DNA of 64,000 nucleotides from the IMG/VR virus record IMGVR_UViG_3300044974_001280, positions 124,001 to 188,000 of that record; one strand, given 5' to 3'. Shown here in pieces: positions 872 through 59,821 of this stretch. Each line of letters begins with the position of its first letter. The stretch's first letter is position 1. A program made the position numbers and the translations under genes. The notes beneath the pieces were generated by a model that was not told where the DNA came from, did no database searches, and saw only the letters and a list, made by a program, of their open reading frames with translations.

Positions 872-879
872 GATATATA
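872..879 (+). promoter_or_regulatory. GATATATA putative late promoter
   Basis: Recurrent intergenic octamer, 18 nt upstream of ATG 898. Confidence 0.7.
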
Positions 880-897
880 AATCAAAAAATCAGATTT

Positions 898-1452
898 ATG
901 ACTCCCAGATTAAAAAACTTTTCCATGTTTTCTGAGGCAATAAACAGAGAAAGAAGCAGGTTTAGATCCAATTTTGATAAAGAGGACGATTGGAGTAAGT
1001 TCGAAGAAATAGAGAGAAGGATAGAGGATCGATATTCAAGAAAAGAATCGGAAACGGGAATTGGTGAATTTTCAGATTCGGGAGCCAGAGCAAGATTTCA
1101 AGCTATGGCAGAAGATCCGAGTGGAGCTCCGCTAAGATTGGTCCGAATGGGCCTGTCCCTTGTTCAGAAGGTGGCTAAATCTATTGTTGATGTTTTTAAA
1201 ATGCCTTTTAGAGGTGGGGATTCTCTGGAGAGTCTTAAGAGACAAAAGAAAGATATGCTAGAAAAATGGGGTGAAACCATTACAAAAAGTGGCAGAAACA
1301 CAAGAGAAGACTATGAGGATTTCTATAGTAGAGCCTACGATAGTGGCAGAAGAACATTTGGAGATGATTTTGATCTAGATTCTCCCAGCTCTGAAGAAGG
1401 CAGGGTGTATTCAAGTTACATTAAAGGGGCCAGAAGATTTTACGATATTTGA
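898..1452 (+). CDS. Hypothetical protein with capsid-targeting-like N-terminus
   Basis: Starts MTPRLKNFSMFSE, downstream of GATATATA. Confidence 0.65.
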   Translation: MTPRLKNFSMFSEAINRERSRFRSNFDKEDDWSKFEEIERRIEDRYSRKESETGIGEFSDSGARARFQAMAEDPSGAPLRLVRMGLSLVQKVAKSIVDVFKMPFRGGDSLESLKRQKKDMLEKWGETITKSGRNTREDYEDFYSRAYDSGRRTFGDDFDLDSPSSEEGRVYSSYIKGARRFYDI

Positions 1453-1454
1453 GC

Positions 1455-2387
1455 ATGATTTATACCTACACACAATATATGGAATTAAATGAAGGAGGGG
1501 CTGCTATTGGCAGTTCTAGAAAGATCCGAGAGGATGAAGTGGCCAAAACTTTGACCCACTTAGGGGAAGCCCTTTTTCCCTTGCTGGGCGATGGAAAATT
1601 AAACAGGGACTTTTTGCTCATTGGCAGCATTGGAAAAAAAGAAAGTCCAGATGACACTTCCGGGGACGTGGATTTGGGAGTTTCTAAACCCTTCCTGGCC
1701 CAAAAATGGGGTGTTCCTGAATCCAAGGTGTTGGATGTAATGACCGAGAAACTGAAGGACCAACTCCCCGACATTTTGGGTTACAAACCGGAGATCAAAA
1801 TGTTTAAAGGGATCAACATAGTCAGCGTTGAATGGCCCATTGAGGGGAACATCAAGAACGGCACGGTTCAACTTGATCTGATTCCAATTGCGGATATGGA
1901 TTGGGCTAAATTTATTTTTTACTCCCCGGACCAGAGAAAAAAAGAATCCAAGTATAAATCTGCCCACAGGAATTGGCTTTTCCAGGCCATTCTTTCGGCC
2001 TTGAAGGATGTAGATTCCGTTGATAAAGAAGGGCAAATCATGGATTATACTGGGTATGTTCTCAAACTAGGAGATGGCGTTTATAAGAATCGTAAGACCT
2101 ATCGGGGAGCAACAAAAAGACTCTCCCGACCTAAAATTTTAGAAGATAGCACCTTTCTAGTCACCAGGGATCCTCAAAAGATGCTAGATCTACTTTTTGG
2201 TTCTGGTGTTAGACCGAGTGATGTTAAGACCTTCGAGGATGTCTGGTCTTTAATAAAAAAACCGACTTTTATCCATGCCGATAAACTACAATCTATAGTG
2301 GAAGATTTTGTCAGATACTTAGAGAGAACCAATCACGACATTCCTTGGGAAATAAAAAAACTGGTTAGTAATGAACGTTTTCCCTAA
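1455..2387 (+). CDS. Pol-beta superfamily nucleotidyltransferase-like protein
   Basis: LIGSIGKK...SGDVDL (GS...DxD) and a third Asp in VQLDL; N-terminus MIYTYTQYMELNE. Confidence 0.6.
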   Translation: MIYTYTQYMELNEGGAAIGSSRKIREDEVAKTLTHLGEALFPLLGDGKLNRDFLLIGSIGKKESPDDTSGDVDLGVSKPFLAQKWGVPESKVLDVMTEKLKDQLPDILGYKPEIKMFKGINIVSVEWPIEGNIKNGTVQLDLIPIADMDWAKFIFYSPDQRKKESKYKSAHRNWLFQAILSALKDVDSVDKEGQIMDYTGYVLKLGDGVYKNRKTYRGATKRLSRPKILEDSTFLVTRDPQKMLDLLFGSGVRPSDVKTFEDVWSLIKKPTFIHADKLQSIVEDFVRYLERTNHDIPWEIKKLVSNERFP

Positions 2388-2802
2388 TCTTTTCTACACC
2401 ACTTTGGATTTCTTGCTGGAAGGAGATGGAATAGAATCCATCTTTAAACACCCCGAAGTCATTTTGTTTAGGACAGTGCTGGGTTTAAATGGTTCTGTCA
2501 TGGCCAATTCAACCGGAGATTACGAAGTTCAGATTGGAGATGAAATTATCTACACGATGGAAAAATCAGTCTACGATTTGATCAATTTTGGTTTTTCTCC
2601 TCCTCCTTTATCCGTTTATGTTCCCTTGCTCTTAATGACCTGGAACTCACCATTACATGATAAATCTAAATTAATTATTGGCAAAATTCTCAATAGTCTT
2701 CTTTTTTTGGAGTCCAGAGGATATGTTGATTTTGAACTTCAAGAATACGGTCCTTTATCTTTTTTTCCAAATTTTCCAACAAGTTTTCCTCCCCATAAAT
2801 AA
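2371..2802 (+). CDS. Hypothetical protein
   Basis: 143-aa ORF filling the operon gap. Confidence 0.55.
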   Translation: MNVFPNLFYTTLDFLLEGDGIESIFKHPEVILFRTVLGLNGSVMANSTGDYEVQIGDEIIYTMEKSVYDLINFGFSPPPLSVYVPLLLMTWNSPLHDKSKLIIGKILNSLLFLESRGYVDFELQEYGPLSFFPNFPTSFPPHK

Positions 2803-2810
2803 TTCATACC

Positions 2811-4760
2811 ATGTCTGGCATTAATCATCTATACGATCTTTACCACAAAAAAGGAGAAAATTTTATCAATTCTCTTTTCAGGGAATTTGTTACCATCAAT
2901 GAAAAGATGGATGGTTCTGCCTTTAGTTTCGAGAGGGATCAAGAGACTGGGAATTTCAAATTTTATCGGCGGGATCAAAGGAATCCAATTACCCTAGTTG
3001 ACCGTACTTTGATGAAATACTATGAGAAACCTATTTCTTATATCACGAGTCTTCCCCCTCACATTATAGAGAGAATCCCCAGAGGCTGGAGATTTGGCCT
3101 AGAGTATTTCGCCAACACCCAGCCAGTTGAAATAGTCTATGATCGGGTGCCCAAAAATAATCTGATTCTTTCTTACATTCATCAAATGGCGCCGGGAGGC
3201 AAAGTCGCCAGAACCCTTCAAAAGAAAGAAAAGCTGGACGAATGGGCTGATCTTTTGGGAGTGGAAAGAAGTCCTATTATTTTTCAGGGCCTGCTTCAGC
3301 CCGATCAAAAAGTTGCCTTGATGGAATTTTTGTCTACCCCCTTCAAAGAGCTAACCCGAAAATTTTCCACTCAAAGTTTCGTGAGGTTTATCATCTCGGT
3401 CCTTAACCCAGCTTTAGAGAAAACTGCTCTGAACGATAACCTGGATAAAGATGTGGAGGGAATCGTGTTTAGGTTTGGTCATCCGGATAGAGAAAGCGAA
3501 ACAGTTTTAGCCAAGATGGTTGATCCCATCTTCACGGAGTTGGCCAAGGAAAAGACCCAACAACAGATGGAAAGAAAACCCAGTGATTTTCTGGGTCTGA
3601 CCCTTTTGGACGTTATGAACTACATTCTCCAAAAGGGGGTAAAATCTTTCGAAACAGAAGGGGATTCTGAGGAGGAAAGATACATCTCCTATATGTCGGA
3701 CGTGTTTGCCAAGTTTCTGAGTCAGTACTCGGAGAAGTATAAAGGCACTGATTTTGATGAACCTGATTATCTGAAGAAAGAAGAATTCAGATTGAACAAA
3801 CAACTCATTTCGGACAGGAGAGTTCTAAAATGGGTCGAAGAAGACCCGGCCTTTGAGTCCTTGTTCAAGTTGATGCTCAATTCATTCAGAAAAATCAAGA
3901 CTCGAGCTTCGGGACTGGTAAAAGCCGGTACTTTAGAACAATTCAATCTACTAGTTCAGAAAATCAAAAATTATGTGGCCAAGAAAAAAATCAACGAGCA
4001 AGAAAAACAAGATTTTACGAGCTTCCTCGAATTCAAGAAAATAAATTCTCCTTCCGTAGATTATCTCAGAGAAGAACTTGATGACAATGAAGAGGAAGAA
4101 AATCCTCTCTTTTCCTTCGACGAATTCATTTCCAAGTTAGAGACCATCGATCAAAAACACGAAGAATACCTAGAGCAACGGGAAGAAAACACGGTTGAAG
4201 AAGCAGAAGAAAAATCTACGGGGAAAAAGGAGGAGAAAAACATCAATGTGATGCTCGGACGATTCCAACCTTTCCATCTGGGACATTTGAAGATGGCCCA
4301 AGAGATGAAGAAAAAAAACGATTTTCCTGTTTTTGTTGTGGTCGTTTATCCAGGTCACAACAGAAATAAAAATTCCCCATTTAATGAAGAGATTATCAAG
4401 CAGTACATGGATTCCTTGATGGAAGCTTATCCAGAAGACTTTGCCGGTTACAAGATTGTCAAATTGGGTCTATTGGGTTCAGTTGTTAATAGATTGGTCG
4501 AAGAGGGCTACATCCCTCATCTGGTGGGATCTGGAGAAGACAGGGCGGATGATTACGGTAAACAGTTTGAGTACATTAAAAAAACAGAGCTGCACGATAA
4601 ATTACCTTCTGATTTCGCTCTTCACGTCAGTAAAAGATCCATGTCTGCCACAGAGGTGAGGACAAAATTGAAGGAAGGCAATTTTACAGCTGCCAAAAAA
4701 ATGTTACCTAAAGCTGTTTTAAACAATTACGAGATTTTGAAGTCCGCTTTGAAAGAATAA
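2811..4760 (+). CDS. RNA-ligase-like nucleotidyltransferase fused to an HxGH cytidylyltransferase/NMNAT-like domain
   Basis: EKMDGS (KxDG motif I), EGIVFR (IV), LAKMV (V); acidic linker; C-terminal GRFQPFHLGH and SATEVR. Confidence 0.65.
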   Translation: MSGINHLYDLYHKKGENFINSLFREFVTINEKMDGSAFSFERDQETGNFKFYRRDQRNPITLVDRTLMKYYEKPISYITSLPPHIIERIPRGWRFGLEYFANTQPVEIVYDRVPKNNLILSYIHQMAPGGKVARTLQKKEKLDEWADLLGVERSPIIFQGLLQPDQKVALMEFLSTPFKELTRKFSTQSFVRFIISVLNPALEKTALNDNLDKDVEGIVFRFGHPDRESETVLAKMVDPIFTELAKEKTQQQMERKPSDFLGLTLLDVMNYILQKGVKSFETEGDSEEERYISYMSDVFAKFLSQYSEKYKGTDFDEPDYLKKEEFRLNKQLISDRRVLKWVEEDPAFESLFKLMLNSFRKIKTRASGLVKAGTLEQFNLLVQKIKNYVAKKKINEQEKQDFTSFLEFKKINSPSVDYLREELDDNEEEENPLFSFDEFISKLETIDQKHEEYLEQREENTVEEAEEKSTGKKEEKNINVMLGRFQPFHLGHLKMAQEMKKKNDFPVFVVVVYPGHNRNKNSPFNEEIIKQYMDSLMEAYPEDFAGYKIVKLGLLGSVVNRLVEEGYIPHLVGSGEDRADDYGKQFEYIKKTELHDKLPSDFALHVSKRSMSATEVRTKLKEGNFTAAKKMLPKAVLNNYEILKSALKE

Positions 4761-4799
4761 AACAAAATTCTAGAGATATATAACATAAAACAATCCACA

Positions 4800-5333
4800 G
4801 TGAAAGTTATTCTTCCTTATTCTCAATTCATTACCCAGCTAAATGAAGCCGATGGGTTTGGAACCTTGCCCTTTCTCTTTAAGAAAGACGGGGATCTATG
4901 TTACTATTTTTTCCAGATAGACAAAGAAAAAGGAGACCAGCAAGGTTATGTTTTTTTGATTGGCAAATACTCCAGATTTGAAAATATGGAGGGTCCAAAA
5001 AATTCTTATGCCGTCATTAATCTCAACCAGATCGAGCCCGAGGTGATCGAAGACATTGCAATTGAGAACACCAAGAATTTACCCGAAGCTAACTCCAATA
5101 AATTTAAACTTAAGGGAGGAGAATTGGCGAGGCTCTACAAGCAGATTGGCAAATGTCTTTTGAATTACTTGGAGAAAAACCCAAAAACAATCAGAATAGT
5201 GGATGAGATGAATCAAAATCTAGTTCTGAATAACTACGAGGAGTACGCTAGATCTATGTTAATTTCGATCCTAGGTGATGAATGGCATTTGCAACCCGGA
5301 TCTAGAAAAGGAGTTTACGTCTTGAATCGCTAG
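4800..5333 (+). CDS. Hypothetical protein with capsid-targeting-like N-terminus
   Basis: MKVILPYSQFITQLNE; GATATATA at 4775-4782. Confidence 0.65.
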   Translation: MKVILPYSQFITQLNEADGFGTLPFLFKKDGDLCYYFFQIDKEKGDQQGYVFLIGKYSRFENMEGPKNSYAVINLNQIEPEVIEDIAIENTKNLPEANSNKFKLKGGELARLYKQIGKCLLNYLEKNPKTIRIVDEMNQNLVLNNYEEYARSMLISILGDEWHLQPGSRKGVYVLNR

Positions 5334-5611: not shown

Positions 5612-5649
5612 GTGGTACATCATTTGGATATATACAAAAAAAAAATTCT

Positions 5650-6993
5650 ATGAACTCTATTATTAAATTCTCTGATTATATTTTAGAAGAAGAAATGAGT
5701 CGAAAGGAGAGGAGACTGCAAAGAAGGGAAGAAAGATTAGAAAAAAAACTCGATAAAATCGGAAAAAAAAGAGGAGGGGATTCTCCAGTCCTGGGTGATC
5801 AAGAAGAAAGCCAAAAACGTTTGAGTACGCCCTTTTATCAAATTAAGGGCAAAGAATTACCTATGGAGCAAAAAATCGACATTAACGGTCAAAGTGTTGA
5901 ACCATACGGGATAGCAAACAATGTTATGAATACCTGGATCGAAGAAGTCAAAACTGAAACCCTAGACAACATCGATTCCAAATATAAAGTGGCTATTAAG
6001 GCTCTAATCGAAAGGTCACTCAATAAGATTTTTCCTATAGTGTCTAAGTACTTTATTCCGTCTGTCAAATTTGATGGTAAGCCTATTATTGAAGAAACTA
6101 AAATCGAGCCTAAAGAATTTTGGCTCCAGGTTTGGCCCCAAATCTGGAAAGAAATGAATGCAGTAGAAAGGGGGATTGTTAAAAGTATGACCTCCTTAAG
6201 AGAAGAAACTACCTATGACCAATTGATAGAAATGGTGGGTAAGGCTTTATCGGATGAGGAATTCTCAGGATACAATGAAGTTGTGTCCGAACAATTATCG
6301 AACTTATTGGAACTTTTTGGCTTGGCTTTTTCTACGACTTTCAAAGACAAGGCAGTGGAAGTTTCCCAAGAAATGATGGGAAAATTGGTCACGGATCTAA
6401 ATGCAAAAGGAGCAAAAATCAATTTCAAGTCCTCTCAAAAATCTAAAGGGGGTCAGCAAGAATTGGAAAATGTTGACCTTGGCAAATCATCAAAAGAAGT
6501 TTGGGCCGAAACAATCGTTAAACAAATAGAAGAATTCAGAAAACTTTTAACTTCAGAAGAAGATAATAAAGGAGAAAAAGATCAAAAATATAAAGAAGAA
6601 GAAGAAGTAAAAGATATAAAATTTCCTTCGTCAATCAAAACAAAGGAAGATTTGAAAAAATGGGCTTCCAGTTTAAGCTCCGATCAAAAACAAGTTCTAT
6701 TGGGTGCCTTGGGATTTAGTGAAGTTAAAAAAGAAGACTCAGAAGGAAAGGACTCGGGAGGATCTGGATCCGTCCAGTCAGCAGGCAGCGGAGGAAAAGA
6801 AGTCTTAAAAAGAGGAATGAAGTCTGAGGAGGTCGGTAAACTCCAGGATGCATTGGGCATGACAAATTTAGGAACCCAAAGAACTAATTTTGGTCCTAAA
6901 ACTGAACAGGCTGTTAAGGAATTTCAAAGGAAAAAAGGTTTGGTGGATGATGGAATAGTGGGACCTAAAACTAGAGAGAAACTTGGAATATAA
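5650..6993 (+). CDS. Protein with C-terminal peptidoglycan-binding domain
   Basis: LKRGMKSEEVGKLQDALG...FGPKTEQAVKEFQRKKGLVDDGIVGPKT; N-terminus MNSIIKFSDYILEE; GATATATA 5627-5634. Confidence 0.75.
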   Translation: MNSIIKFSDYILEEEMSRKERRLQRREERLEKKLDKIGKKRGGDSPVLGDQEESQKRLSTPFYQIKGKELPMEQKIDINGQSVEPYGIANNVMNTWIEEVKTETLDNIDSKYKVAIKALIERSLNKIFPIVSKYFIPSVKFDGKPIIEETKIEPKEFWLQVWPQIWKEMNAVERGIVKSMTSLREETTYDQLIEMVGKALSDEEFSGYNEVVSEQLSNLLELFGLAFSTTFKDKAVEVSQEMMGKLVTDLNAKGAKINFKSSQKSKGGQQELENVDLGKSSKEVWAETIVKQIEEFRKLLTSEEDNKGEKDQKYKEEEEVKDIKFPSSIKTKEDLKKWASSLSSDQKQVLLGALGFSEVKKEDSEGKDSGGSGSVQSAGSGGKEVLKRGMKSEEVGKLQDALGMTNLGTQRTNFGPKTEQAVKEFQRKKGLVDDGIVGPKTREKLGI

Positions 6994-10335: not shown

Positions 10336-10728
10336 ATGAGAGAAAGACTTATTCAAGAAGATTATGTAGAAGAACCCTGGAGAATGCTGGTCTGCTGCAT
10401 TCTTCTTAACCAGACCTCAAACCAGCAAGTCCGAAAAGTGCTCCCTGACGTTTTTTCTTTCGTGCCCGATCCTGACACTGCCGTAAATTGTGATGTTGAT
10501 CAGCTGATTCAGTTGATCAAAAGCACCGGCTTTTCTCGGGTCAAAGCCCAAAGAATTATTCAGATGAGCCACAAATGGCTAGAGGGGTTTCATCAAGTTT
10601 CAGAACTGCCAGGTGTGGGCAGATATGCCCACGACTCCTGGAAAATTTTCATCCAAAAAATGAGAGATCTAGAGGTGACCGATAAAAAATTGGCCAAGTT
10701 TTTAGAGGAGGTTCGGTTGGATATATAA
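10336..10728 (+). CDS. MBD4-like HhH-GPD DNA glycosylase
   Basis: LIQE...PWRMLVCCILLNQT, HhH LPGVGRYAHDSWKIF, DKKL. Confidence 0.8.
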   Translation: MRERLIQEDYVEEPWRMLVCCILLNQTSNQQVRKVLPDVFSFVPDPDTAVNCDVDQLIQLIKSTGFSRVKAQRIIQMSHKWLEGFHQVSELPGVGRYAHDSWKIFIQKMRDLEVTDKKLAKFLEEVRLDI

Positions 10729-10731
10729 GAG

Positions 10732-12429
10732 GTGGGCAATGTCATTAAATCCCAGATAGTTACCAGGGACACCAAAAATTTACTCAACTACACAACTTGG
10801 GTAGCTGGGAATAGCTCAGCTACTGGTTTCTCCAGAAATGGCGGGGCAGCAGAGAATCTACTGGTAAACGGTCTGGACCCTTGGGGCAACGAAACGGTTT
10901 TGTGGTTGTCACTACCCGACGGAGGTGGAAATGATGACGGAGGTTGGAACACGACAAATTTTTCTATAGATCACACTAAGCTCTATCGTTTTTCTGTGTG
11001 GGTAAAAAGGACAGTGTATGTGGAGGGTCGGTTCTATTTTGGAACAAATGGATTTGGTTCTACTAATGGAGTTTTAAGTCGTTCCACCGGAACAAACAAC
11101 ACTAACCCCTATTTTTGGACGTCGTCTGATCCGCCAACTACAGCCGAGATGCCTAACAGCACCTGGATTTTAGTGGTTGGACACGTTTGGCCATCTGGAT
11201 CGGGGACTGGAGCTAACAAACCAGAATCTGGCAGATATACTATTGGCTTGGGTAGATATGCTGGTATTTCTCTAGATTTCGTCTGGCGAACAGAATCTAC
11301 CCAGGCTAGACACAGAACTTATCTATACTATGCAGAGAGCAACTTACCTAGACAATATTGGTGTTACCCTAGAGTCGATATTGTAGATGGAACCGAGCCT
11401 ACCATAGCCCAATTATTGGGCGGATATGGCGCTTTGTCTTCTGTCTCTCTCCAAAAAAGCAATTTTTTATTAGGCCCTTCGGATACTGTTTCCTATTATG
11501 AAACATCACAGGGTGGGTATTGGAACGGTATCCTTCCGGCTTCCGGTGGTTACACGATTTATCTGGGTAATCCTGCCACAGCGGGGGCTTCTGCCTCACC
11601 CCCTGTTATTTACACTGCATCAAGCGGTAATGATTTAGTGACTGTGTCTGGCGTTGTGTTCAGAAATACTTTTAGTTCAGCCAGCGACGTATTGAGCTGG
11701 GCTGCTCCTCAGAACGACATTCTGATCGTTAACCGAGAATACGAGCCGATAGTTACTTCCGGTTTGGTACTAAATCTAGATGCGGGATTTACCCCTTCTT
11801 ATCCCACGACTGGAACAACCTGGTACGATCTGAGTGGGAATGGATTTAATGGCACTTTAGTTAACTCTCCAACTTATTCTTCGAATGAAGGAGGAATAAT
11901 CACATTCGATGGGATCAATGACTACGTGGAAATAGCGGACGCGACAAGTTTGAATTTTGGAACCGGAGGTTTTACAATTCTTATGTGGGTGGGTGGAATA
12001 CCTTCTTATCCTGGTTCCGCTAAAACTATAATTAGAAAGGGAAGCAGATTCGACGGTAACGTGGCGGGATGGTCTATTGTATGGGCGGGAAGTCCTCAGG
12101 ATTTGTATTTTATTATCAGCAGTTCTACGGCAAGACTGGAAGGAAGAACAAGTCCAAATGGTGGTTTGAACGGCTGGAGTGGATATAAATTAATTGGTGT
12201 CCAAAGAAGTGGAACCAATTGGAATCAAATCAACAACACCACAGTTACAACTTTAGGAACATTTAGCGGAGATGTAAACAACACATTGCCGATCACAATT
12301 TCATACAATTCACAGTATGCGTCATATCTAAATCAACAGGTTGGTATGACCTTGATTTACAATAGAGCTCTTAGCTCAGCTGAAATTACACAAGTTTACA
12401 ATGCCACAAAAGCCAGATATGGCTTATAA
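10732..12429 (+). CDS. Virion-associated lectin-like (LamG/ConA) domain protein
   Basis: G/T/S-rich; IVTSGLVLNLDAG...WYDLSGNG...FDGINDYV...IYNRALS..EI..VYNATKARYGL; GATATATA 4 nt upstream. Confidence 0.75.
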   Translation: MGNVIKSQIVTRDTKNLLNYTTWVAGNSSATGFSRNGGAAENLLVNGLDPWGNETVLWLSLPDGGGNDDGGWNTTNFSIDHTKLYRFSVWVKRTVYVEGRFYFGTNGFGSTNGVLSRSTGTNNTNPYFWTSSDPPTTAEMPNSTWILVVGHVWPSGSGTGANKPESGRYTIGLGRYAGISLDFVWRTESTQARHRTYLYYAESNLPRQYWCYPRVDIVDGTEPTIAQLLGGYGALSSVSLQKSNFLLGPSDTVSYYETSQGGYWNGILPASGGYTIYLGNPATAGASASPPVIYTASSGNDLVTVSGVVFRNTFSSASDVLSWAAPQNDILIVNREYEPIVTSGLVLNLDAGFTPSYPTTGTTWYDLSGNGFNGTLVNSPTYSSNEGGIITFDGINDYVEIADATSLNFGTGGFTILMWVGGIPSYPGSAKTIIRKGSRFDGNVAGWSIVWAGSPQDLYFIISSSTARLEGRTSPNGGLNGWSGYKLIGVQRSGTNWNQINNTTVTTLGTFSGDVNNTLPITISYNSQYASYLNQQVGMTLIYNRALSSAEITQVYNATKARYGL

Positions 12430-12433: not shown

Positions 12434-12760
12434 CTATTTACTTTCCGTTTTGGCCTTGCCAGATAGAGTCTCATGAATTCTCTGTTTTACGTACTTTAGC
12501 ACTTTCTTAGAATCTTTGTGGTCTTTTGAAAGCATTTTTTGAAATTCTTCTTCCTCTGCTAACTCGTCTAGATACGAATACAAGTCAGTTGTGTTGTAGA
12601 GATCGTCAACTACCTGGGGCATCTGAGTGTAGGCTGGACGATAATTTCTGGAGTTAACGTTGTCTTTATACCAATCACCTGGCACTACCACACTCCCTGG
12701 AGCGAAGGCGCTCCAGCTTTCGGATAAAAATTTTTTGAAACTTTTAATACGGGGGGTCAT
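12434..12760 (-). CDS. Hypothetical protein with capsid-targeting-like N-terminus
   Basis: Probable start MTPRIKSFKKFLSE at 12760, GATATATA on minus strand at 12766-12773. Confidence 0.65.
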   Translation of the reverse strand: MTPRIKSFKKFLSESWSAFAPGSVVVPGDWYKDNVNSRNYRPAYTQMPQVVDDLYNTTDLYSYLDELAEEEEFQKMLSKDHKDSKKVLKYVKQRIHETLSGKAKTESK

Positions 12761-17864: not shown

Positions 17865-18497
17865 ATGGATTTAGTTAAGAATTTCTCAGATTTTTTAATA
17901 GAAAGAGAATTGCCGGATTCTCAAGGAAAAATTCTAGTTGTGATGGGACCTCCGGGATCAGGTAAAGGAACTTTTTCCGAAAAACTGGCAGATAGGCAAG
18001 GCTTCCACCACATTTCAACCGGAGAATTGCTCAGGAAATCAAAAAACCCGGAGATCAAGAAAAAAGTTGAACGGGGTGATTTCATCGACGATCAGACAGT
18101 TGTAAAGATGATCCGGAGGGAACTGAAGAAAATTGATCCTGATGATGGGATCATTATTGACGGATTCCCCCGGACCGTTAAACAAGCCTCTCTGTTAGAT
18201 TCTTTGCTCGGAAAAATGGGCTTGGGCCTGAGCCACACCATCTATCTGGATATAGACGAAGAAACGGCCAAAGGCAGAATTACTGCCAGGGCGGAAAGAG
18301 AAGACCGGAAGGACGACAAAGATCCAGAGGTGGTGGCTAAAAGATTCAGAGACTATGAAGAAAAAACTGCACCCCTGATTGATCTCTACACAAAAAACAG
18401 AAAACTGAAAAAATATAATGCCGCCAAAGGTAGCGAGAGCGTTTACAAGAAGATCGTGAAGGCCTTAGAACTAAACCGGACCCCTGATTCAGAATAA
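17865..18497 (+). CDS. adk: Adenylate kinase with capsid-targeting-like N-terminal extension
   Basis: GPPGSGKGT, HISTGELLR, DGFPRT, short LID R.DD; N-terminus MDLVKNFSDFLIE. Confidence 0.9.
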   Translation: MDLVKNFSDFLIERELPDSQGKILVVMGPPGSGKGTFSEKLADRQGFHHISTGELLRKSKNPEIKKKVERGDFIDDQTVVKMIRRELKKIDPDDGIIIDGFPRTVKQASLLDSLLGKMGLGLSHTIYLDIDEETAKGRITARAEREDRKDDKDPEVVAKRFRDYEEKTAPLIDLYTKNRKLKKYNAAKGSESVYKKIVKALELNRTPDSE

Positions 18498-24142: not shown

Positions 24143-24156
24143 GCCCTTATATATCT

Positions 24157-24939: not shown

Positions 24940-24952
24940 GCCTTATATATCT

Positions 24953-39516: not shown

Positions 39517-39843
39517 ATGTATAAGAAAAAAATTCTAGAATTCGACGATTTTGTTTCAAATCTGTCTCTCAGTGAAGTCCAACAGGAAGAAATCAAAGAT
39601 TTCGTTAAAAAATACGAAAAATACATGAATTTTCATGACACGGGAGATTTTGAATCTTCTTTAGATGAATTAGTTAAAGATGTGATGACCCACTTTAACT
39701 TTCCCTCTTCTAAAAAAGAAGACGTTCAGAATTTCATTCAGAGTCTTCAAACTCTGTCTGATGGTATGTCAGTTATTATGTCCCCGGGTCCTGAAATTAT
39801 CTACCGGACCAATCCCGATATGACCCAAACAATTGTTTACTAA
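39517..39843 (+). CDS. Hypothetical protein with capsid-targeting-like N-terminus
   Basis: MYKKKILEFDDFV...LSE. Confidence 0.65.
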   Translation: MYKKKILEFDDFVSNLSLSEVQQEEIKDFVKKYEKYMNFHDTGDFESSLDELVKDVMTHFNFPSSKKEDVQNFIQSLQTLSDGMSVIMSPGPEIIYRTNPDMTQTIVY

Positions 39844-40163: not shown

Positions 40164-40694
40164 ATGAAAAATATTATCTCTTACGACAATTTTACTCCAG
40201 AATCTTCTGATCCTTTACAGGAGGGATGGAAAGATGCCGGCTATGGCTACAAAAGGTACCAACCCCCAGGCATGTTACAAACCATGAAAAGAAAAACAAA
40301 AAGCCTGTTTGGTATTGAATCAAGCAAGGATCGGGAAAGATTAGGACAAATTTACAAAGAAATTGAAAATCCTCCCTATCAAGGTTATATCTCCAACGTC
40401 AGAGACATCAGTGGAGAATATCCGGCTTTAATTTGCCATCTGGGACCTAGAAATCTGTCTGTTATGTGCGATCCACAAGACCCTTCCATCAGATGGGGAG
40501 GAAGTGAATTGGATTTGGCGGATATCGATGATGAATGCCAAAGACTTTATCGTTTCATCAAAAAGCACATGGACCTGACTGAAAATACACATTCTCCAAC
40601 GGACAACACCATCAAAGATCCTAAAAACATGTACTCTTCCTACCCAGGTGTAGGTGGGGTGAGTAACCGAACAGTCAACCGTTCTCTGATTTAA
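40164..40694 (+). CDS. Hypothetical protein with capsid-targeting-like N-terminus
   Basis: MKNIISYDNF...LQEG. Confidence 0.6.
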   Translation: MKNIISYDNFTPESSDPLQEGWKDAGYGYKRYQPPGMLQTMKRKTKSLFGIESSKDRERLGQIYKEIENPPYQGYISNVRDISGEYPALICHLGPRNLSVMCDPQDPSIRWGGSELDLADIDDECQRLYRFIKKHMDLTENTHSPTDNTIKDPKNMYSSYPGVGGVSNRTVNRSLI

Positions 40695-41305: not shown

Positions 41306-42322
41306 TTATTTTATGTAATCAGAGATTTCCATCATTTTATCAAAATCTCCCTCCTCGTCGGCCTTTCTGTATTCCCTTTTTAGTTCTTCTTGGGACATAC
41401 TAGCGTAATCTTTGGTGATCTGTGATTCTGAACCACTTGGGGATTTGGCAGCTTGTCTGGCTTTCCATGCTGCTAATTTCCTTTCATACTCAGCCTTATC
41501 GGCTCTATCCTGCTCCAGCCAGGCATCTCTGGCTTCCACCCTCTCAATGACTACATCAATCAATTCATCGATTTTTTTTCTGGCTTCTGGAGTTTTTCTA
41601 AAAATTCCTGTCATCAGAGGTAAAAATTCAGCCGTGGGTAAATTCTCTGGATCCACCATATATTTCCAAAGTTCCTCTCTCAAATTAGAATATTTGATGA
41701 CCTTGGGATTCTCAAAGATAAATTTTCTTAGATCTTCGGCCATTTGAGGACCATATCTCCATTCGTCCGGTTCGTCTATCAATCCGAATTGATCTTCAAT
41801 AGCCTTGGCTAGTTCAGGGTCATCTGGTACTGCAGACATTGACATAACCCTCCAAATTCCTTTGACTGCCTCATGAATCAGCATGCTGAAATCCGCTCCT
41901 AAAGCTTTAATTACTGGTTTAGAATCCGGTCGAGGTCTGTTTTTTTGTCTTGTTTTTCTAAAGCTGTCATCCAACATCCTCCTTATTTCTGGTCCCTGTA
42001 CTAGTTTAATTTCAAGCTTTATGTCGTAGTAATCAATGAGGGGCTTGTATAGATCTGTAATTATTTCTCTTGCTAGATCTTCTAGCTCCTTTTCATACCC
42101 TCTAGAAAGTTGCTGGGATCTCGAAAAATTTCCCATCAACTGGCTAACGGCTTGGCTGATTCCTTGCGGGGATCCCTCGGGAGTTTTCCCGATGCCGAGT
42201 TTTTCTTTAGCTCTTCTCGTGACATCCTCTAGGTAGTCGGGGGGAATACTCACCATGTCTTTAACCCTAATAGCCTCATTAAAGGATGCAAAATTCTTTG
42301 TGAAATTGGCTTTTAGTGACAT
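41306..42322 (-). CDS. Hypothetical protein with HExxK motif and C-terminal UVR-like helix pair
   Basis: LIHEAVKG; C-terminal LKREYRKADEEGDFDKMMEI; N-terminus NFASFNE. Confidence 0.6.
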   Translation of the reverse strand: MSLKANFTKNFASFNEAIRVKDMVSIPPDYLEDVTRRAKEKLGIGKTPEGSPQGISQAVSQLMGNFSRSQQLSRGYEKELEDLAREIITDLYKPLIDYYDIKLEIKLVQGPEIRRMLDDSFRKTRQKNRPRPDSKPVIKALGADFSMLIHEAVKGIWRVMSMSAVPDDPELAKAIEDQFGLIDEPDEWRYGPQMAEDLRKFIFENPKVIKYSNLREELWKYMVDPENLPTAEFLPLMTGIFRKTPEARKKIDELIDVVIERVEARDAWLEQDRADKAEYERKLAAWKARQAAKSPSGSESQITKDYASMSQEELKREYRKADEEGDFDKMMEISDYIK

Positions 42323-42326: not shown

Positions 42327-44792
42327 TTAGTAAAATGGTTTTCTTTTTTTGAGTTCTGATATGTACCTTTTGATCACATCCATCTCTGAAGCTTTTTTCT
42401 TTATTGCTTGGGGTCCAGGAGCATGAGAAGGAACTTTAATTCGTGGTGCAATTGACGGATGAGGAGTTATTCTTCGGACCGGTTCTGCATCTGGATCAAA
42501 ATCCTCATCCTCATCTTCATCCTCACTGGGTGTAGGTTTAGGAGTAGGCTTAGGCTGTGGTTTAGGCGTAGGTTTAGGCAGTGGTTTAGGCAGTGGTTTA
42601 GGCAAAGGAGCTGGTTTTCCCTTTTCCTCTTCTTTCTCCCTTTCTGTTTCCGCCTCGTCTAATCTATCGCTAAATTCTGAAAAACTATTGATTCTTCTAG
42701 GACTTGTAGATTCGAACAAAGAAAAACTTTTGTGGATTTTTCTGAGTCTAGATTCAGATAACTCTGAAATTTTCTTTCCGTTAATGACTAACTCATCTGC
42801 CAAGGAATCGTAATCAATTTTGAGGTTGGATCCTTCCTCAATCTCTTCCTCGATTATAAAATTGGCTAGAGGGTCCTTGATATATTTCTCCACTGCTCTT
42901 CTAAGGGGTCTAGCCCCATATTCAGGGTCAAATCCGTGTTTAAGTAACAACTTGTAAACCGAAGTTCCCCAAGTCAGATTAATGTCTTGGGTATTTTTAA
43001 TCCTATCTGCCACCTTCTCGAGCTCTTTTTCTGCAATCTTTTTTATTGATTCTTGGTCTATTGACTGAAAAATAACAATATCATCTATTCTATTAATAAA
43101 TTCGGGCGAAAACTCTTTTTTGATCGCTGCATCGACTCTTGCTTTGATTTCCTCAGGTGATTCTGCTCCAGTCTGTTTTGTTTCATCTTCTGGTTCATCT
43201 TTAACCAAAAAACCAATCGCTTTTCTGGGTTCCTTTGATTTAACCTTTTTAGATCCTGTTTTTGATCCCACATTAGAAGTCATGATAATAACACAGTTTG
43301 TAAAGTCAACCGTTCTCCCTTGCCCGTCCGTCATCCTTCCATCTTCTAGCACCCCTAGCAGGGATTGTATAACTTGAGGGTTTGCTTTTTCGATCTCATC
43401 TAGCAAAATTACCGAATAAGGGTTTCTTCTGACTTGCTCTGTTAGTTTGCCTCCTTCCGAATAACCTACATAACCGGGAGGTGATCCAAACAATTTAGAT
43501 CCTGTATGAGCCTCCGAATATTCATTCATATCAATCCTAATCAATTTAGATTCCCTAGATCCAAAAAGCTCCTCAGCCAATTTTTTCACCAAATAGGTTT
43601 TACCTGTCCCAGTAGGGCCCACGAATAAAAATACCCCTTCAGGTCTATTAGGGTCTTTAAGACCCGACCTGTTTCTTTTAATTGTTCTAACAACGGTCTC
43701 TACCGCCTCGTCTTGACCGATAACTTTTGATTTCAGTCTGCTTGACATTCCTTTTAGGATTGCCTTACTGCCCTTTTTCATCGTTTCAACAGGAATCCCT
43801 GTTTTATCTGCCACTAGTTTTTCCACCATTTCTTTAGTGACGGTAATTTTAGGTCCCATTTGACCTTTCGCAGCCATTTTTTCAAGCCGACTCTCTATCT
43901 TTTCTTTTTCATCTGATAGATCTGCAGCAGCATCATAGTCACCTTCTGCCGTCTTTTGCCTGATCCGGTCTAGGAGTTCTAAATTTTTCTTTTCTAGATT
44001 CGCAACCTCCGCATCCGGGGCATTTTTAATGCGAATTCGTGCACCGGATTCGTCCATCAAGTCGATAGCTTTATCTGGCAAAAATCGGTCTTTAATATAC
44101 TGCTTAGATAGTTTATAAAAGGATTCTAAGGCTTCTGGTGAATAATTAACATGATGCCAATCCCCATATTTTTCTTGGATTTCTCTAAGTATTTCCATGC
44201 ATTCCTCGTAGGTAGGCTCTTCAACTTTGATCGGTTGAAATCTTCTTTCCATGGCTCCGTCTTTCTCAATAGTTTGACCATATTCACTATAAGTGGAACC
44301 ACCGATCATATGAAGTTTGGCTTTAGCCAAAAAGGGTTTGAGTTCATCGTAACTTGCTTTAGGTAGAGAATGGAGTTCGTCCACAAAAATAATCAAGTTA
44401 TCTTCCTCAATTTCACGGGCCAAAAGGGGTAAATAACCTCCATTAACTATTTTTTTAAATGCCCAGGTCAAATCTATTAACTTTTTCCCCTTTAAAAAAC
44501 CGGGACATTTATCGCTTGCCATTAAAAGAGCAAGCTTATCCACAATAGCGGTTTTTCCAACGCCCGGCTCTCCAACCAAAACTGGATTATCCTTGGTTTT
44601 CCTGGCCAGAATGCGAAGCAACTGTTCCAATTCCTTATCCCTTCCAATTACTTCATTTATCTCTCCCTCCTTCGCTGCTTTGGTCATATCCTCACCGTAT
44701 GCTTGCCAAAGCTTTTCATCATCTGGGACTTTTAGTTCTTCCTCAGATTCGAATAATCTTAATTTTTTGTAATTCTTGGATATTCTTTTCAT
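42327..44792 (-). CDS. ClpC/ClpA-like Hsp100 AAA+ ATPase lacking the Clp N-domain
   Basis: GEPGVGKT/FVDE, RFLPDKAID, UVR-like M domain, GPTGTGKT, PPGYVGY, LLDEIEKA, IGF loop, GARPLRR. Confidence 0.9.
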   Translation of the reverse strand: MKRISKNYKKLRLFESEEELKVPDDEKLWQAYGEDMTKAAKEGEINEVIGRDKELEQLLRILARKTKDNPVLVGEPGVGKTAIVDKLALLMASDKCPGFLKGKKLIDLTWAFKKIVNGGYLPLLAREIEEDNLIIFVDELHSLPKASYDELKPFLAKAKLHMIGGSTYSEYGQTIEKDGAMERRFQPIKVEEPTYEECMEILREIQEKYGDWHHVNYSPEALESFYKLSKQYIKDRFLPDKAIDLMDESGARIRIKNAPDAEVANLEKKNLELLDRIRQKTAEGDYDAAADLSDEKEKIESRLEKMAAKGQMGPKITVTKEMVEKLVADKTGIPVETMKKGSKAILKGMSSRLKSKVIGQDEAVETVVRTIKRNRSGLKDPNRPEGVFLFVGPTGTGKTYLVKKLAEELFGSRESKLIRIDMNEYSEAHTGSKLFGSPPGYVGYSEGGKLTEQVRRNPYSVILLDEIEKANPQVIQSLLGVLEDGRMTDGQGRTVDFTNCVIIMTSNVGSKTGSKKVKSKEPRKAIGFLVKDEPEDETKQTGAESPEEIKARVDAAIKKEFSPEFINRIDDIVIFQSIDQESIKKIAEKELEKVADRIKNTQDINLTWGTSVYKLLLKHGFDPEYGARPLRRAVEKYIKDPLANFIIEEEIEEGSNLKIDYDSLADELVINGKKISELSESRLRKIHKSFSLFESTSPRRINSFSEFSDRLDEAETEREKEEEKGKPAPLPKPLPKPLPKPTPKPQPKPTPKPTPSEDEDEDEDFDPDAEPVRRITPHPSIAPRIKVPSHAPGPQAIKKKASEMDVIKRYISELKKRKPFY
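42529..42610 (-). repeat. 12-bp tandem repeats encoding a PKP(L/T/Q) linker
   Basis: ggtttaggcagt-type units. Confidence 0.8.
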
Positions 44793-51920: not shown

Positions 51921-51921
51921 C

Positions 51922-53810: not shown

Positions 53811-53821
53811 ATTTTTTAAGA

Positions 53822-54982: not shown

Positions 54983-54987
54983 CATTT

Positions 54988-55392: not shown

Positions 55393-55402
55393 AATAAAAA
55401 AA

Positions 55403-56044: not shown

Positions 56045-56051
56045 AAGAATT

Positions 56052-57964: not shown

Positions 57965-57965
57965 C

Positions 57966-58700
57966 ATGGATCTTTCTTTGGTTGTTCACACGTGTGATTC
58001 GTACCATCAGTTTTGGTTTGGTATGTTGTATTCCTTAGACCTGTACTGGGATTTTGAAAAAATCCCTGTTTATTGGGCATCCGAAGAACGGAATGTCAAG
58101 GATTTTGAACTTTCGTGCAGGGGTCACCTCTTCAAGCCTAACTCCGCGATGCAAAGCATTTTGACCGGAAAGACGGATAAAAATGGATTTTCCACCAGAA
58201 TGAAAAAAACCTTATCCGAAATTACCTCAAAATGGATCATTTATCTCCAGGAAGATATGTGGCTAAAATCTTCTTTTCCCTATCCCGTTTTAGAACAACT
58301 TTTGCTGTTCGCAGAAGTCCAAAAGGCGGAATCCATCAAGATTCACACCAAATTACACTATTACGATGCCTACCGCCTAGATCCTACCCCTTACGTCATT
58401 AACAAGGTTAGGATCATGAAGCACAGTCAAGGAGAAAATTATCTCCACTCTCATAATGCAACTATCTGGAATAGAGAGTACTTAATCCAAAACATTGTTG
58501 ATGGAGAAGATCCCTGGACAAACGAGGTTGAAGGGTCTAAAAGAATGAGCAGCAAAGTTCACAATCATTATCACTATAACGTCCACTGGTATTCCCAGCC
58601 TGGAGTTTGTGATAAGGGCCAACCTTCAGCAGAGTATTACCTTATGGGTCCTATTTTAGATGACCTAATGAGCATGAAATTATCGTCCGAAAAATTTTAA
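57966..58700 (+). CDS. Putative glycosyltransferase
   Basis: TCDSY...W, YLQED, ATIW, PW..E. Confidence 0.55.
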   Translation: MDLSLVVHTCDSYHQFWFGMLYSLDLYWDFEKIPVYWASEERNVKDFELSCRGHLFKPNSAMQSILTGKTDKNGFSTRMKKTLSEITSKWIIYLQEDMWLKSSFPYPVLEQLLLFAEVQKAESIKIHTKLHYYDAYRLDPTPYVINKVRIMKHSQGENYLHSHNATIWNREYLIQNIVDGEDPWTNEVEGSKRMSSKVHNHYHYNVHWYSQPGVCDKGQPSAEYYLMGPILDDLMSMKLSSEKF

Positions 58701-58711
58701 AAATAAACAGC

Positions 58712-58993
58712 ATGCAAATCCCCCCTAAAAGAATCAGAAAGCCAGAGGATTCTCTGATGAAACATTATCAGGAACAATACGTCAGAAATCAAAACAAGTG
58801 GATTCGAAGATCCAAACTCTTGCCAGAACACTTAGATCAAGAATTTCTATTGGAAGGTGAAAAATACTGTCTTCGGGGTAGTACCAGTCCCGTTCAAGTT
58901 GTGGTTGAAAAAAAATCCACCTCCGAATACTTTATCATGTCCATTGATCCCGTTACAAAATCAATTTTAGGAGAGCCAGAAGTTGAAGATTAA
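58712..58993 (+). CDS. Hypothetical protein
   Basis: 93-aa ORF. Confidence 0.5.
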   Translation: MQIPPKRIRKPEDSLMKHYQEQYVRNQNKWIRRSKLLPEHLDQEFLLEGEKYCLRGSTSPVQVVVEKKSTSEYFIMSIDPVTKSILGEPEVED

Positions 58994-59224
58994 GATTCTT
59001 ACCACCTCGCCCAGAACACATCTGGAAGTTTGTTCCCTTATTAATCTTCATAAGGTTGAAATCTTAGAAAACAAATTTGATGAAGAAGGATTTTATAGTT
59101 TTTTTTTACTAGAAAGTCTACCTATCTACGTTGATGATTTTATTCTAATTCCCGACATAAAAGTTCACTGGAACAAGGAAATCCAGTAAAAAATGAGTCC
59201 TGATGCAGATATATAATCTCAGTT

Positions 59225-59626
59225 ATGGAAACTCAAAAACCGATTTCAGAGATCATCAGGGAGGTTTTACAGGATGAATTAAACTCTATGAGGGAAAGAT
59301 CTCCAGGCCACGATCTAAGGATCATCCAGATCAGCATGGAGGAACTCAAAGCAGCTCAGTCTGAAATGAAAAAAGATCTCTCGGAGCTAAAGAAAAAACT
59401 TCTGGATCCAGATGATGGTGTGATCGTCAAAGTAAACGAAAACACCAAATTCAGACTAGAACAACAGAGACAGAAGGAGAAAGATGAGGTTGAATACCGG
59501 AACCTCTTACTAGAACACTCTGACCTCATGAAGTGGAAAGGGGGGATCACCAAAGCTATGTGGATCTTTTTCACCACTTTGGTTGGGATTTTAGCAAAAA
59601 TCTTTTTCCTATCTGATACAAATTAA
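59225..59626 (+). CDS. Coiled-coil protein with C-terminal TM helix
   Basis: LLDPDDGVIVKVN; C-terminal AMWIFFTTLVGILAKIFF; GATATATA 59208-59215. Confidence 0.6.
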   Translation: METQKPISEIIREVLQDELNSMRERSPGHDLRIIQISMEELKAAQSEMKKDLSELKKKLLDPDDGVIVKVNENTKFRLEQQRQKEKDEVEYRNLLLEHSDLMKWKGGITKAMWIFFTTLVGILAKIFFLSDTN

Positions 59627-59635
59627 AAAAACACC

Positions 59636-59821
59636 ATGTCAAATCCACAAACAGTTGCTCCAGACCCTAAACACACCACCGACGATAATTTCGTCAAGTG
59701 GTACGATCAAAGGGCTTACAGTTCGAAAGTTGGCTCTCTGGGTATGAAGCAGGCCACGGTTGGTAAGCTCATGAAGTTTGAAGAGTTCAAAAAGACTTTC
59801 TCGAGCCTCCAATCTAAATAA
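59636..59821 (+). CDS. Small protein with C-terminal targeting-like motif
   Basis: LMKFEEFKK. Confidence 0.55.
   Translation: MSNPQTVAPDPKHTTDDNFVKWYDQRAYSSKVGSLGMKQATVGKLMKFEEFKKTFSSLQSK

What the first reader, a model, noticed from the sequence alone, without database searches (positions are those of the whole stretch)
872..59821. Genome-wide 'late promoter + capsid-targeting peptide' code marking a large injected proteome
Seen: about 20 unrelated proteins begin with (I/L/V)-x-x-(F/Y)-x-x-(F/Y), usually followed by (L/I/F)-x-E. Examples: LKNFSMFSE (898), IYTYTQYMELNE (1455), ILPYSQFITQLNE (4800), IIKFSDYILEE (5650), IKSFKKFLSE (12760-), VKNFSDFLIE (Adk), ILNFGEF..ISE (22117-), IQNFRDF (lysozyme), LQSFSLFE (three LRR genes), VLNFQDF (30850), IQSFKIFE (35608-), VLNFCNFLNE (RimK), ILEFDDF (39517), IISYDNF (40164), NFASFNE (42322-) and the looser YKKLRLFE (ClpC). 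The same motif occurs C-terminally (ILSFKDFIK, IQSFSDFIQ, LVDYRDYIK, LMKFEEFKK) and internally (ligase linker, ClpC tail). It is absent from the replication and metabolic enzymes (Pol, Nrd, Topo, GS, GTs). Most tagged genes lie directly behind GATATATA or a one-base variant, or in an operon headed by one. Established: T4 internal proteins carry the capsid targeting sequence MKTYQEFIAE, and the gp21 prohead protease cleaves after (L/I)-x-E. Inference: this phage uses a portable tag to load enzymes (Adk, RimK-protease, ClpC, nucleotidyltransferases, lysozyme, LRR binders) into the head for delivery at infection, a far larger and more enzymatic cargo than T4's.
Basis: partly seen in the sequence, partly recalled or inferred. 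Interest (0 to 1): 0.85.

Follow-up and report, generated by a model that had tools for sequence, protein, structure and literature searches.

The report
Expanded T4-type capsid-targeting tag
At least 16 unrelated late proteins in this window, and about 30 in 161 kb of the same huge phage, start with the short peptide that phage T4 uses to load proteins into its head; the phage therefore probably packs many ready-made enzymes for delivery into its host, but packaging itself is untested.

Summary
The motif [ILV]xx[FY]xx[FY] lies in the first 30 residues of 21 ORFs, against 5.1±2.3 in shuffles. GATATATA occurs 20 times against 1.3 expected, nearly always 4-24 nt upstream of a start codon. Tag and box are linked (13/16 tagged vs 9/74 untagged genes, p=1e-7). 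A [LIFVM]-x-E site follows 21 of 24 non-redundant tags (background 27-30%).

The window comes from a phage of at least 267 kb, distantly T4-like, probably infecting Bacteroidota. The tag has the same register as the N-termini of T4 ipI, ipII and ipIII.

Relatives carry T4-family portal, S77 prohead protease (fused to a scaffold-like tail) and Gp23 capsid genes. In 76 such head modules, the gene just after the capsid gene is tagged in 36/59 cases, against 11/359 distant genes. Adenylate-kinase orthologues in 118 related clusters nearly all keep the tag, and F10 and E13 are invariant.

So a T4-type capsid-targeting and cleavage tag, greatly expanded, is the best reading (about 0.7).

Not shown: packaging, cleavage or ejection. 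I did not find this phage's own head module. C-terminal copies are no more frequent than chance; internal copies are suggestive only.

The parts
898..1452 (+). Tagged late gene, 184 aa, no family match; N-terminus MTPRLKNFSMFSE; box GATATATA at 872-879
1455..2387 (+). Tagged gene, 310 aa (MIYTYTQYMELNE), second gene of the operon headed by the box at 872
4014..4151 (+). Two internal tag-like copies (residues 402 and 433, the second ending KLE) in the acidic linker of the 649-aa RNA-ligase-like / cytidylyltransferase-like protein (2811-4760)
   Evidence: The 31%-identical orthologue in LR756500 also has a tag-like copy in the same linker. Suggestive only.
4800..5333 (+). Tagged gene, 177 aa (VKVILPYSQFITQLNE), box at 4775-4782
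5650..6993 (+). Tagged gene, 447 aa (MNSIIKFSDYILE), C-terminal peptidoglycan-binding domain, box at 5627-5634
12434..12760 (-). Tagged gene, 108 aa (MTPRIKSFKKFLSE), box at 12766-12773
   Evidence: called as a gene in public assemblies
17865..18497 (+). Adenylate kinase with a 20-residue N-terminal tag (MDLVKNFSDFLIE, then RELPDSQG), box at 17853-17860
   Evidence: The Pfam ADK domain starts at residue 26. The tag is kept in 108 of 118 orthologue clusters. F10 and E13 are invariant. Residues 1-20 have low pLDDT and lie outside the fold.
21554..22117 (-). Tagged gene, 187 aa (MKILNFGEFRDQISE), downstream of the lysozyme gene in the same operon
22126..23007 (-). Tagged phage lysozyme, 293 aa (tag RRIQNFRDF), variant box TATATATA at 23012-23019
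23039..25936 (-). Three tandem LRR paralogues (23039-24142, 24157-24939, 24953-25936), each starting VKHLQSFSLFE and each with its own box 4-5 nt upstream of the start codon
   Evidence: More copies lie about 144 kb downstream, and a relative carries eight in tandem.
30850..31920 (+). Tagged gene, 356 aa (MKSSKVLNFQDFL...ITE), box at 30826-30833
34793..35608 (-). Tagged gene, 271 aa (MQKENPIQSFKIFE), distantly related to the LRR family, box at 35613-35620
37302..38768 (+). Tagged RimK-like ATP-grasp protein, 488 aa (MNSLPAVLNFCNFLNE), box at 37270-37277
39517..39843 (+). Tagged gene, 108 aa (MYKKKILEFDDF...LSE), box at 39502-39509
40164..40694 (+). Tagged gene, 176 aa (MKNIISYDNF...LQE), in the operon headed by the box at 39502
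41306..42322 (-). Loosely tagged gene, 338 aa (MSLKANFTKNFASFNE), downstream of the ClpB/C-like gene
   Evidence: fails the strict regex
42327..44792 (-). ClpB/C-like double AAA+ protein, 821 aa. Loose N-terminal match (NYKKLRLFE), variant box AATATATA at 44814-44821, and two internal copies at residues 687 and 701 (about 42645-42734), just before a Pro/Lys-rich tail
10720..12429 (+). Box-headed late gene without a tag: 565-aa homologue of virion structural proteins of Flavobacterium and cyanobacterial T4-like phages
   Evidence: It shows that the box marks late or structural genes in general, and the tag only a subset.

Best explanation
The peptide is a T4-type capsid-targeting sequence (CTS) ending in a prohead-protease site.

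Proposed mechanism. A late promoter (GATATATA, a relative of T4's TATAAATA) switches the tagged genes on while proheads assemble. The N-terminal 10-20 residues (hydrophobic, x, x, aromatic, x, x, aromatic, L/I, x, E) dock the protein onto the scaffolding core of the prohead. A gp21-family (S77) serine protease then cuts after (L/I/F)-x-E. The mature protein stays in the head with the DNA and leaves with it at infection.

Shown here: the motif, its N-terminal position, its link to the box, the cleavage-type site, its identity of register with T4 ipI-III, its conservation, and its concentration next to capsid genes in relatives that have T4-family head genes.

Inferred: docking, cleavage, packaging, ejection, and that this phage's own head genes match those of its relatives.
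For: 1. Statistics of motif, site and box.

2. T4 read from its GenBank record. Of 14 head and other T4 proteins checked, only ipI, ipII and ipIII match the same regex, at residue 1; ipII and ipIII have L/I-x-E ending at residue 10, ipI at 19. A PWM built from the window ranks ipII and ipIII highest among hits that begin at a start Met.

3. The phage is T4-like. It has gp32, UvsW, topoisomerase II subunits and T4-type RNA ligase. Its nearest sequenced relative, LR756500 (UvsW 41% identical), has gp4, gp2, gp20, gp21 and gp23 in T4 order.

4. Pfam on relatives: Peptidase_S77 at 58.7 and 42.6 bits (cut-off 27), Portal_T4, and Gp23 for the capsid protein.

5. In 76 distinct head modules, the gene immediately after the capsid gene is tagged in 36/59 cases and genes between protease and capsid gene in 8-13%, against 11/359 distant genes. 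Typical starts are MKHIKLFEQFINE and MKKLKTYDEFVNE.

6. The capsid protein's own N-terminus has invariant L-I-N-E at residues 6-9, the same ending as many tags (FLNE, FINE).

7. LR756500 has at least 32 proteins starting MKYIKEYEEFLNE-like, and 27 of them carry the site.

8. Adk orthologues at 55-67% identity keep the tag (108/118 clusters), and F10 and E13 are as invariant as the P-loop. The tag lies outside the predicted fold.

9. The same box precedes the portal and protease genes in relatives L091 and L043, which supports its being a late promoter.

10. Published background on T4: internal proteins share only a CTS that takes them into the scaffolding core, gp21 removes it, and Alt is also cut near its C-terminus (PMC3012670, PMC5694885).
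Against: There are no virion proteomics or expression data for this phage or any close relative.

I did not find this phage's own protease, scaffold or capsid genes in the window or in about 100 kb of flanks, nor with pattern scans.

The nearest cultured relative I inspected, Tenacibaculum phage PTm1 (capsid protein about 31% identical to that of relative L091), shows no tag around its capsid gene.

Three of 24 tags lack a nearby site. Some proposed cargo is large (the 821-aa AAA+ protein) and only loosely tagged.

The window PWM is not very specific in T4: non-coding frames and UvsW.1 score as high.
Confidence: 0.7

Rival explanations
1. The peptide is a docking motif for another late hub, not the prohead core. 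Candidates are a tail or baseplate assembly factor, or the phage's own chaperones (HSP20, DnaJ and the ClpB/C-like protein are all encoded here). Tagged proteins would then act inside the infected cell.
For: Short amphipathic motifs at N-termini, in linkers and in tails are typical of hub-binding peptides. Internal copies exist. A chaperone set is encoded in the window. No packaging data exist.
Against: This reading does not explain several findings: the near-identity of register with T4 ipI-III, the following (L/I/F)-x-E site, the shared LINE ending with the capsid protein's N-terminus, or the 61% tagging of the gene next to the capsid gene.
Confidence: 0.12
2. The peptide is a propeptide cut by the prohead or another protease, but its role is to keep enzymes inactive or to time their release, not to target them. 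Only some tagged proteins end up in heads.
For: The cleavage-type site is the strongest conserved feature (E13 invariant in Adk). Muralytic and PG-binding cargo could be dangerous if active early.
Against: The conserved aromatic pair upstream of the site (F7 and F10 in Adk) is not needed for a simple cleavage site. In T4 the same peptide is sufficient for targeting (PMC5694885, citing Mullaney and Black).
Confidence: 0.1
3. The motif has no peptide function. It is a by-product of AT-rich, unstructured 5' coding ends needed for Shine-Dalgarno-less or leaderless translation, or of a copied promoter-plus-5'-end cassette spread by recombination.
For: The box lies only 4-24 nt from the start codon and no Shine-Dalgarno sequence is visible. 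K, N, I, F and Y have AT-rich codons. Paralogues share identical 5' DNA. Mobile promoter cassettes are known in T4-type phages (PMC2839356).
Against: Shuffling only the N-terminal 35 residues destroys the signal (z=6.4). Codons vary synonymously. The same peptide is kept in phages of 24% to 41% G+C and across 118 Adk clusters. Late genes without the tag also exist.
Confidence: 0.04
4. The motif is a sliding-clamp (PIP-like) binding or secretion signal.
For: Clamp-binding peptides also sit at protein ends and contain aromatic residues.
Against: The aromatics are spaced i and i+3, not adjacent, and no Gln is conserved. The tagged proteins are lysozyme, PG-binding, LRR and kinase proteins, not DNA enzymes, and Pol and Topo lack the motif. 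There is no hydrophobic h-region. The real signal peptides in the window (48636, about 49289) look different.
Confidence: 0.02

Closest known systems
T4 internal proteins IPI, IPII, IPIII and their capsid-targeting sequence
   Same: N-terminal 10-20-residue peptide with hydrophobic, aromatic and aromatic residues at positions 0, 3 and 6, then L/I-x-E. It is carried by otherwise unrelated proteins, expressed late, in a phage lineage with Gp20, S77 and Gp23 head genes (PMC3012670).
   Different: T4 has three such proteins, plus Alt and a few core proteins with other short propeptides. This phage has at least 16 in 64 kb and about 30 in 161 kb, and its relative LR756500 has at least 32. The tag here usually starts 2-7 residues after the Met, not at the Met. 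Cargo includes recognisable enzymes (Adk, ATP-grasp, lysozyme, AAA+). The protease in relatives is fused to a long scaffold-like tail. The promoter is GATATATA, not TATAAATA.
T4 Alt and gp24 propeptides
   Same: Short propeptides removed by gp21 after I/L-x-E. Alt is an enzyme delivered with the DNA and is also cut near its C-terminus (PMC5694885), which is a precedent for internal or C-proximal sites such as those in the ClpB/C-like tail.
   Different: Their propeptides lack the aromatic pair.
phiKZ / SPN3US giant-phage ejection proteins
   Same: Dozens of head-internal proteins, some enzymatic, processed by a gp21-related protease and ejected into the host (PMC5694885).
   Different: Those use an S80 protease cutting after S/A/G-x-E and mostly long (over 100 residue) propeptides. 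Here the relatives' protease scores higher for S77 than S80, the P3 residue is L/I/F, and the tags are short.
Phage P1 Dar system (DarA, Hdf, DarB) and other head-packaged anti-defence proteins
   Same: Head-packaged proteins delivered with the DNA to act first in the new host (PMC9024508 and PMC12810830, listed).
   Different: Packaging there depends on a hierarchy of specific proteins, not on one portable peptide shared by many genes.

Membership tests
T4-type CTS / internal-protein system | Short N-terminal peptide with the IP-type pattern, shared by otherwise unrelated proteins | tested here: met
   21 vs 5.1 expected. Same register as T4 ipI, ipII and ipIII. The proteins carry unrelated domains: ADK, RimK, lysozyme, PG_binding, LRR.
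T4-type CTS / internal-protein system | Tag ends at a gp21-type site (L/I-x-E) | tested here: met
   21/24 against a 27-30% background. This is sequence evidence only; actual cleavage cannot be tested here.
T4-type CTS / internal-protein system | The phage encodes a gp21-family (S77) prohead protease and a scaffolding core | tested here: inconclusive
   Met in relatives (Peptidase_S77 above cut-off, fused to a 400-residue tail). Not found in 161 kb of this phage, and the rest of its genome was out of reach.
T4-type CTS / internal-protein system | Late expression together with head genes | tested here: inconclusive
   The tag is strongly linked to the GATATATA box, and the box precedes portal and protease genes in relatives. 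No transcript data are available.
T4-type CTS / internal-protein system | Tagged proteins are present and processed in virions and ejected | not testable with these tools
   Needs virion mass spectrometry. No cultured close relative was found.
T4-type CTS / internal-protein system | Genes associate with the head-morphogenesis module | tested here: met
   In relatives, the gene at position +1 from the capsid gene is tagged in 36/59 cases against 11/359 far genes. In this phage the tagged genes are scattered in accessory regions, as T4's IP genes are.
phiKZ-like (S80) propeptide system | Cleavage after S/A/G-x-E and long propeptides | tested here: not met
   The P3 residue is L/I/F/V/M in 21/24 tags. 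Tags are 10-25 residues long. S77 outscores S80.
PIP-box / clamp-binding peptides | Q-x-x-(I/L/M)-x-x-(F/Y)-(F/Y), on DNA-metabolism proteins | tested here: not met
   The PWM shows aromatics at i and i+3 and no conserved Gln. Pol and Topo are untagged.

The most novel reading that the evidence does not exclude
A very large, environmentally widespread clade of T4-related huge phages of Bacteroidota has turned the T4 CTS into a general address label. Any captured gene placed behind the late box and given about 15 codons becomes virion cargo. These phages would then inject tens of different pre-made proteins. One would be a clade-wide conserved adenylate kinase; others would be ATP-grasp ligases, AAA+ unfoldases, wall-binding or wall-cutting proteins, and rapidly diversifying LRR binders. 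This would be a protein 'first strike' far larger than T4's.
Probability: 0.45. Interest if true: 0.8.

Novelty: new variant of a known kind. Interest (0 to 1): 0.66.

Why it matters
If the tag works as in T4, a simple sequence rule predicts the injected proteome of thousands of uncultured huge phages. More than 3,200 related Gp23-family capsid proteins were found, and 118 clusters of tagged Adk.

It would point directly to the proteins these phages need in the first seconds of infection. It would explain part of why their genomes are so large. It would also offer new, naturally diverse packaging tags for phage-based protein delivery.

A conserved packaged adenylate kinase would be a new idea about how a phage primes host nucleotide pools. 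In the searchable literature, no paper connects capsid-targeting sequences with huge phages or megaphages.

Tried and rejected
1. Looked for this phage in GenBank phages: no DNA match. The RNR gene is uninformative because it is horizontally spread.

2. Walked the genome with 12 exact-protein look-ups, covering window coordinates from about -15 kb to about +144 kb. Upstream is blocked by a 3,724-aa fibre-like gene. Downstream ends in LRR repeats, where assemblies break, including a 267-kb NCBI contig. No head genes were found.

3. Fished for the head module with capsid proteins of relatives, a capsid alignment on genome contigs, two degenerate portal patterns, and exact words next to and inside the repeat. 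These returned only relatives or already known regions.

4. Scanned T4 with the PWM from the window. It ranks ipII and ipIII at the top of true N-termini, but noise in non-coding frames is as high, so the PWM alone is weak evidence.

5. C-terminal tags rejected as not above chance.

6. Translation or composition artefact rejected.

7. PHROGs and Pfam give no function for most tagged proteins.

8. The cultured distant relative PTm1 shows no tag near its capsid gene, so it is not a ready experimental model.

9. BLAST of window proteins against LR756500 finds only 12 homologues. Tagged cargo turns over fast, and only synteny and the tag persist.

Full report
WHAT THE WINDOW IS

The window is phage DNA of about 40% G+C, with A-rich leaders and no Shine-Dalgarno sequences. 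An exact 47-mer places it on IMG/VR contigs of up to 230 kb and on an NCBI contig of 267 kb.

It encodes T4-style replication genes. These include a UvsW-like helicase, with gp32 just upstream, topoisomerase II subunits about 30% identical to those of T4-likes, and T4-type RNA ligases.

By UvsW, the closest sequenced genomes are an uncultured 462-kb phage, LR756500 (41% identity), other huge phages, and the Prevotella Lak megaphages. A Bacteroidota host is an inference. It rests on these relatives, on the missing Shine-Dalgarno sequence, and on a published description of similar freshwater phages (PMC9723584).

CHECKING THE OBSERVATION

I called ORFs mechanically, blind to the motif.

- The core motif [ILV]xx[FY]xx[FY] starts in the first 30 residues of 21 ORFs. 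Shuffles give 5.1±2.3, and none of 300 reaches 21. Interior counts (34 vs 29.7) and C-terminal counts (5 vs 2.6) are ordinary.
- In 161 kb of the same phage, assembled piecewise from public contigs, 49 of 254 ORFs match. Shuffling only the first 35 residues gives 21.4±4.3 (z=6.4). AT-rich N-terminal composition is therefore not the cause.
- Codons within the tag vary synonymously.
- About 30 tags are convincing by eye. Those outside the window include a 98-aa protein beginning MKTYHQFLNE, three PG-binding or LysM proteins beginning MVHNFNQFL, and further LRR paralogues.
- A [LIFVM]-x-E triplet follows within 12 residues in 21 of 24 non-redundant tags, against 21-30% in three kinds of control.

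THE PROMOTER BOX

GATATATA occurs 20 times against 1.26 expected. Nearly every copy lies in sense orientation 4-24 nt upstream of a start codon. T4's TATAAATA occurs once.

Tagged genes carry the box far more often than untagged ones: 13/16 against 9/74, p=1.2e-7, or p=1.4e-6 with the LRR paralogues collapsed. The three tagged genes without a box are downstream members of box-headed operons.

The box also heads untagged late-type genes. These include a homologue of virion structural proteins and two signal-peptide proteins. In two relatives it precedes the portal and protease genes. So the box marks late genes, and the tag marks a subset of them.

WHAT THE TAG IS

I fetched T4 from GenBank. 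Of 14 T4 proteins checked, only ipI, ipII and ipIII match the same regex, starting at the Met. ipII and ipIII have L/I-x-E ending at residue 10, and ipI at 19. Position by position this is the window's consensus: hydrophobic 0, aromatic 3, aromatic 6, L/I 7, E 9. A PWM from the window scores ipII and ipIII highest among hits that begin at a start Met in T4, although noise in other frames is similar.

RELATIVES

LR756500, fetched in pieces, has gp4, gp2, gp20, gp21 and gp23 homologues in T4 order. Its protease and that of a second relative pass Pfam's Peptidase_S77 threshold and are fused to a long C-terminal region. The portal is Portal_T4 and the capsid protein is Gp23 family.

LR756500 has at least 32 proteins starting with an almost fixed MKYIKEYEEFLNE-like peptide, often in paralogue clusters, and 27 carry the site.

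The capsid protein is 56-76% conserved in hundreds of IMG/VR loci and more than 3,200 database proteins. Across 76 distinct head modules:

| Gene position relative to the capsid gene | Tagged |
|---|---|
| Immediately after (+1) | 36/59 |
| Between protease and capsid gene (-1 to -3) | 8-13% |
| Distant genes | 11/359 |

The capsid protein's own N-terminus has invariant L-I-N-E at residues 6-9. This is the same ending as many tags, as expected if one protease trims both.

CONSERVATION ON ONE CARGO

The adenylate kinase has 118 orthologue clusters at 55-67% identity, on contigs of up to 328 kb. Of these, 108 keep the strict tag, all with the site, and the rest are near-variants.

In an alignment of 27 orthologues, F10 and E13 are invariant and F7 nearly so, like the P-loop. 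Pfam's ADK domain starts at residue 26. An AlphaFold model puts residues 1-20 outside the fold at low confidence. The tag is therefore a selected, detachable extension.

INTERNAL AND C-TERMINAL COPIES

C-terminal copies are not enriched in this phage or in LR756500.

Two internal sets look real but remain anecdotal. The ClpB/C-like tail has two copies, each ending in L-x-E, just before a Pro/Lys-rich tail. The acidic linker of the ligase-like protein has copies too, and the LR756500 orthologue has its own copy in the same linker. T4 Alt is cut by gp21 near both ends (PMC5694885), so internal sites have a precedent.

MECHANISM AND RIVALS

The best-supported model is late expression, docking on the prohead core through the tag, removal of the tag by an S77 protease, and retention in the head for ejection with the DNA. 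I put it at about 0.7. Packaging, cleavage and ejection are inferred by analogy.

Rivals are another late docking hub (0.12), a propeptide that controls activity without targeting (0.10), a translation or cassette by-product (0.04), and clamp-binding or secretion signals (0.02). The evidence for and against each is given in its own section.

LIMITS

I could not reach this phage's own head genes. Pattern scans found only relatives. The cultured distant relative PTm1 shows no tag near its capsid gene, so no proteomic data bear on the tag.

NOVELTY

The CTS principle and enzyme delivery by phage heads are known (PMC3012670, PMC5694885). What appears new is the scale and breadth: tens of tagged proteins per genome, recognisable enzymes as cargo, a conserved tagged Adk, and spread through a very large uncultured clade. 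No paper in the searchable library links capsid targeting with huge phages. I rate it a new variant of a known kind.

Noticed in passing
window 9330-9806: A 158-aa late protein aligns with residues 17-123 of a clade capsid protein (33% identity, E=4e-7). It looks like a small paralogue of the capsid protein's N-terminal region. It also carries one of the C-terminal motif copies.
   Followed up: partly
window 872-59215 (all boxes): In at least eight genes only 4-5 nt separate the GATATATA box from the start codon. If the box is a -10-type element as in T4, these mRNAs would be leaderless or nearly so. That would fit a host without Shine-Dalgarno-based initiation.
   Followed up: no
window 23039-25936; L186 11163-13015; L253 4179-10578: The tagged LRR family is a fast-evolving tandem array: three copies here (local G+C 55%), at least two more about 144 kb downstream where several assemblies end, and eight in tandem in a related 219-kb contig. 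Each copy has its own box 4-5 nt upstream of the start codon.
   Followed up: partly
window 5387-5566: A 59-aa Hc1-type histone-like protein (PF07432) is encoded between two tagged genes. It is a candidate DNA-condensing head protein without a tag.
   Followed up: no
window 9914-10270, 29416-30459, 42327-44792: The phage encodes its own chaperone set: HSP20, DnaJ and a ClpB/C-like double AAA+ protein.
   Followed up: no
window 12434-14210: The family-B DNA polymerase is represented here by a 467-aa gene covering the exonuclease domain and the N-terminal part of the polymerase domain only, as in LR756500. A tagged 108-aa gene sits on the opposite strand directly upstream.
   Followed up: no
window 45800-59000: A low-G+C (31-38%) island of glycosyltransferases, an aminotransferase, an acetyltransferase and methyltransferases has no tags and almost no boxes. 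It probably serves sugar or DNA or surface modification and may have been acquired separately.
   Followed up: no
L178 13536-15662; L176/L177: Outside the window, thymidylate synthase is split by an inserted ORF. There are also a Tad3-like gene, two cREC_REC genes, two further RNA ligases and a long run of small early-type ORFs.
   Followed up: no
T4 record, about 114213 (L006): The start of T4 UvsW.1 matches the window's tag PWM as well as ipII and ipIII do. Whether that is chance is unknown.
   Followed up: no
L179 2635-6640 (about 110 kb downstream of the window start): A cluster of tagged proteins carries peptidoglycan-binding or LysM domains. It lies next to untagged chitinase-like, YkuD-like and metallopeptidase genes, which suggests wall-directed virion cargo.
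   Followed up: partly
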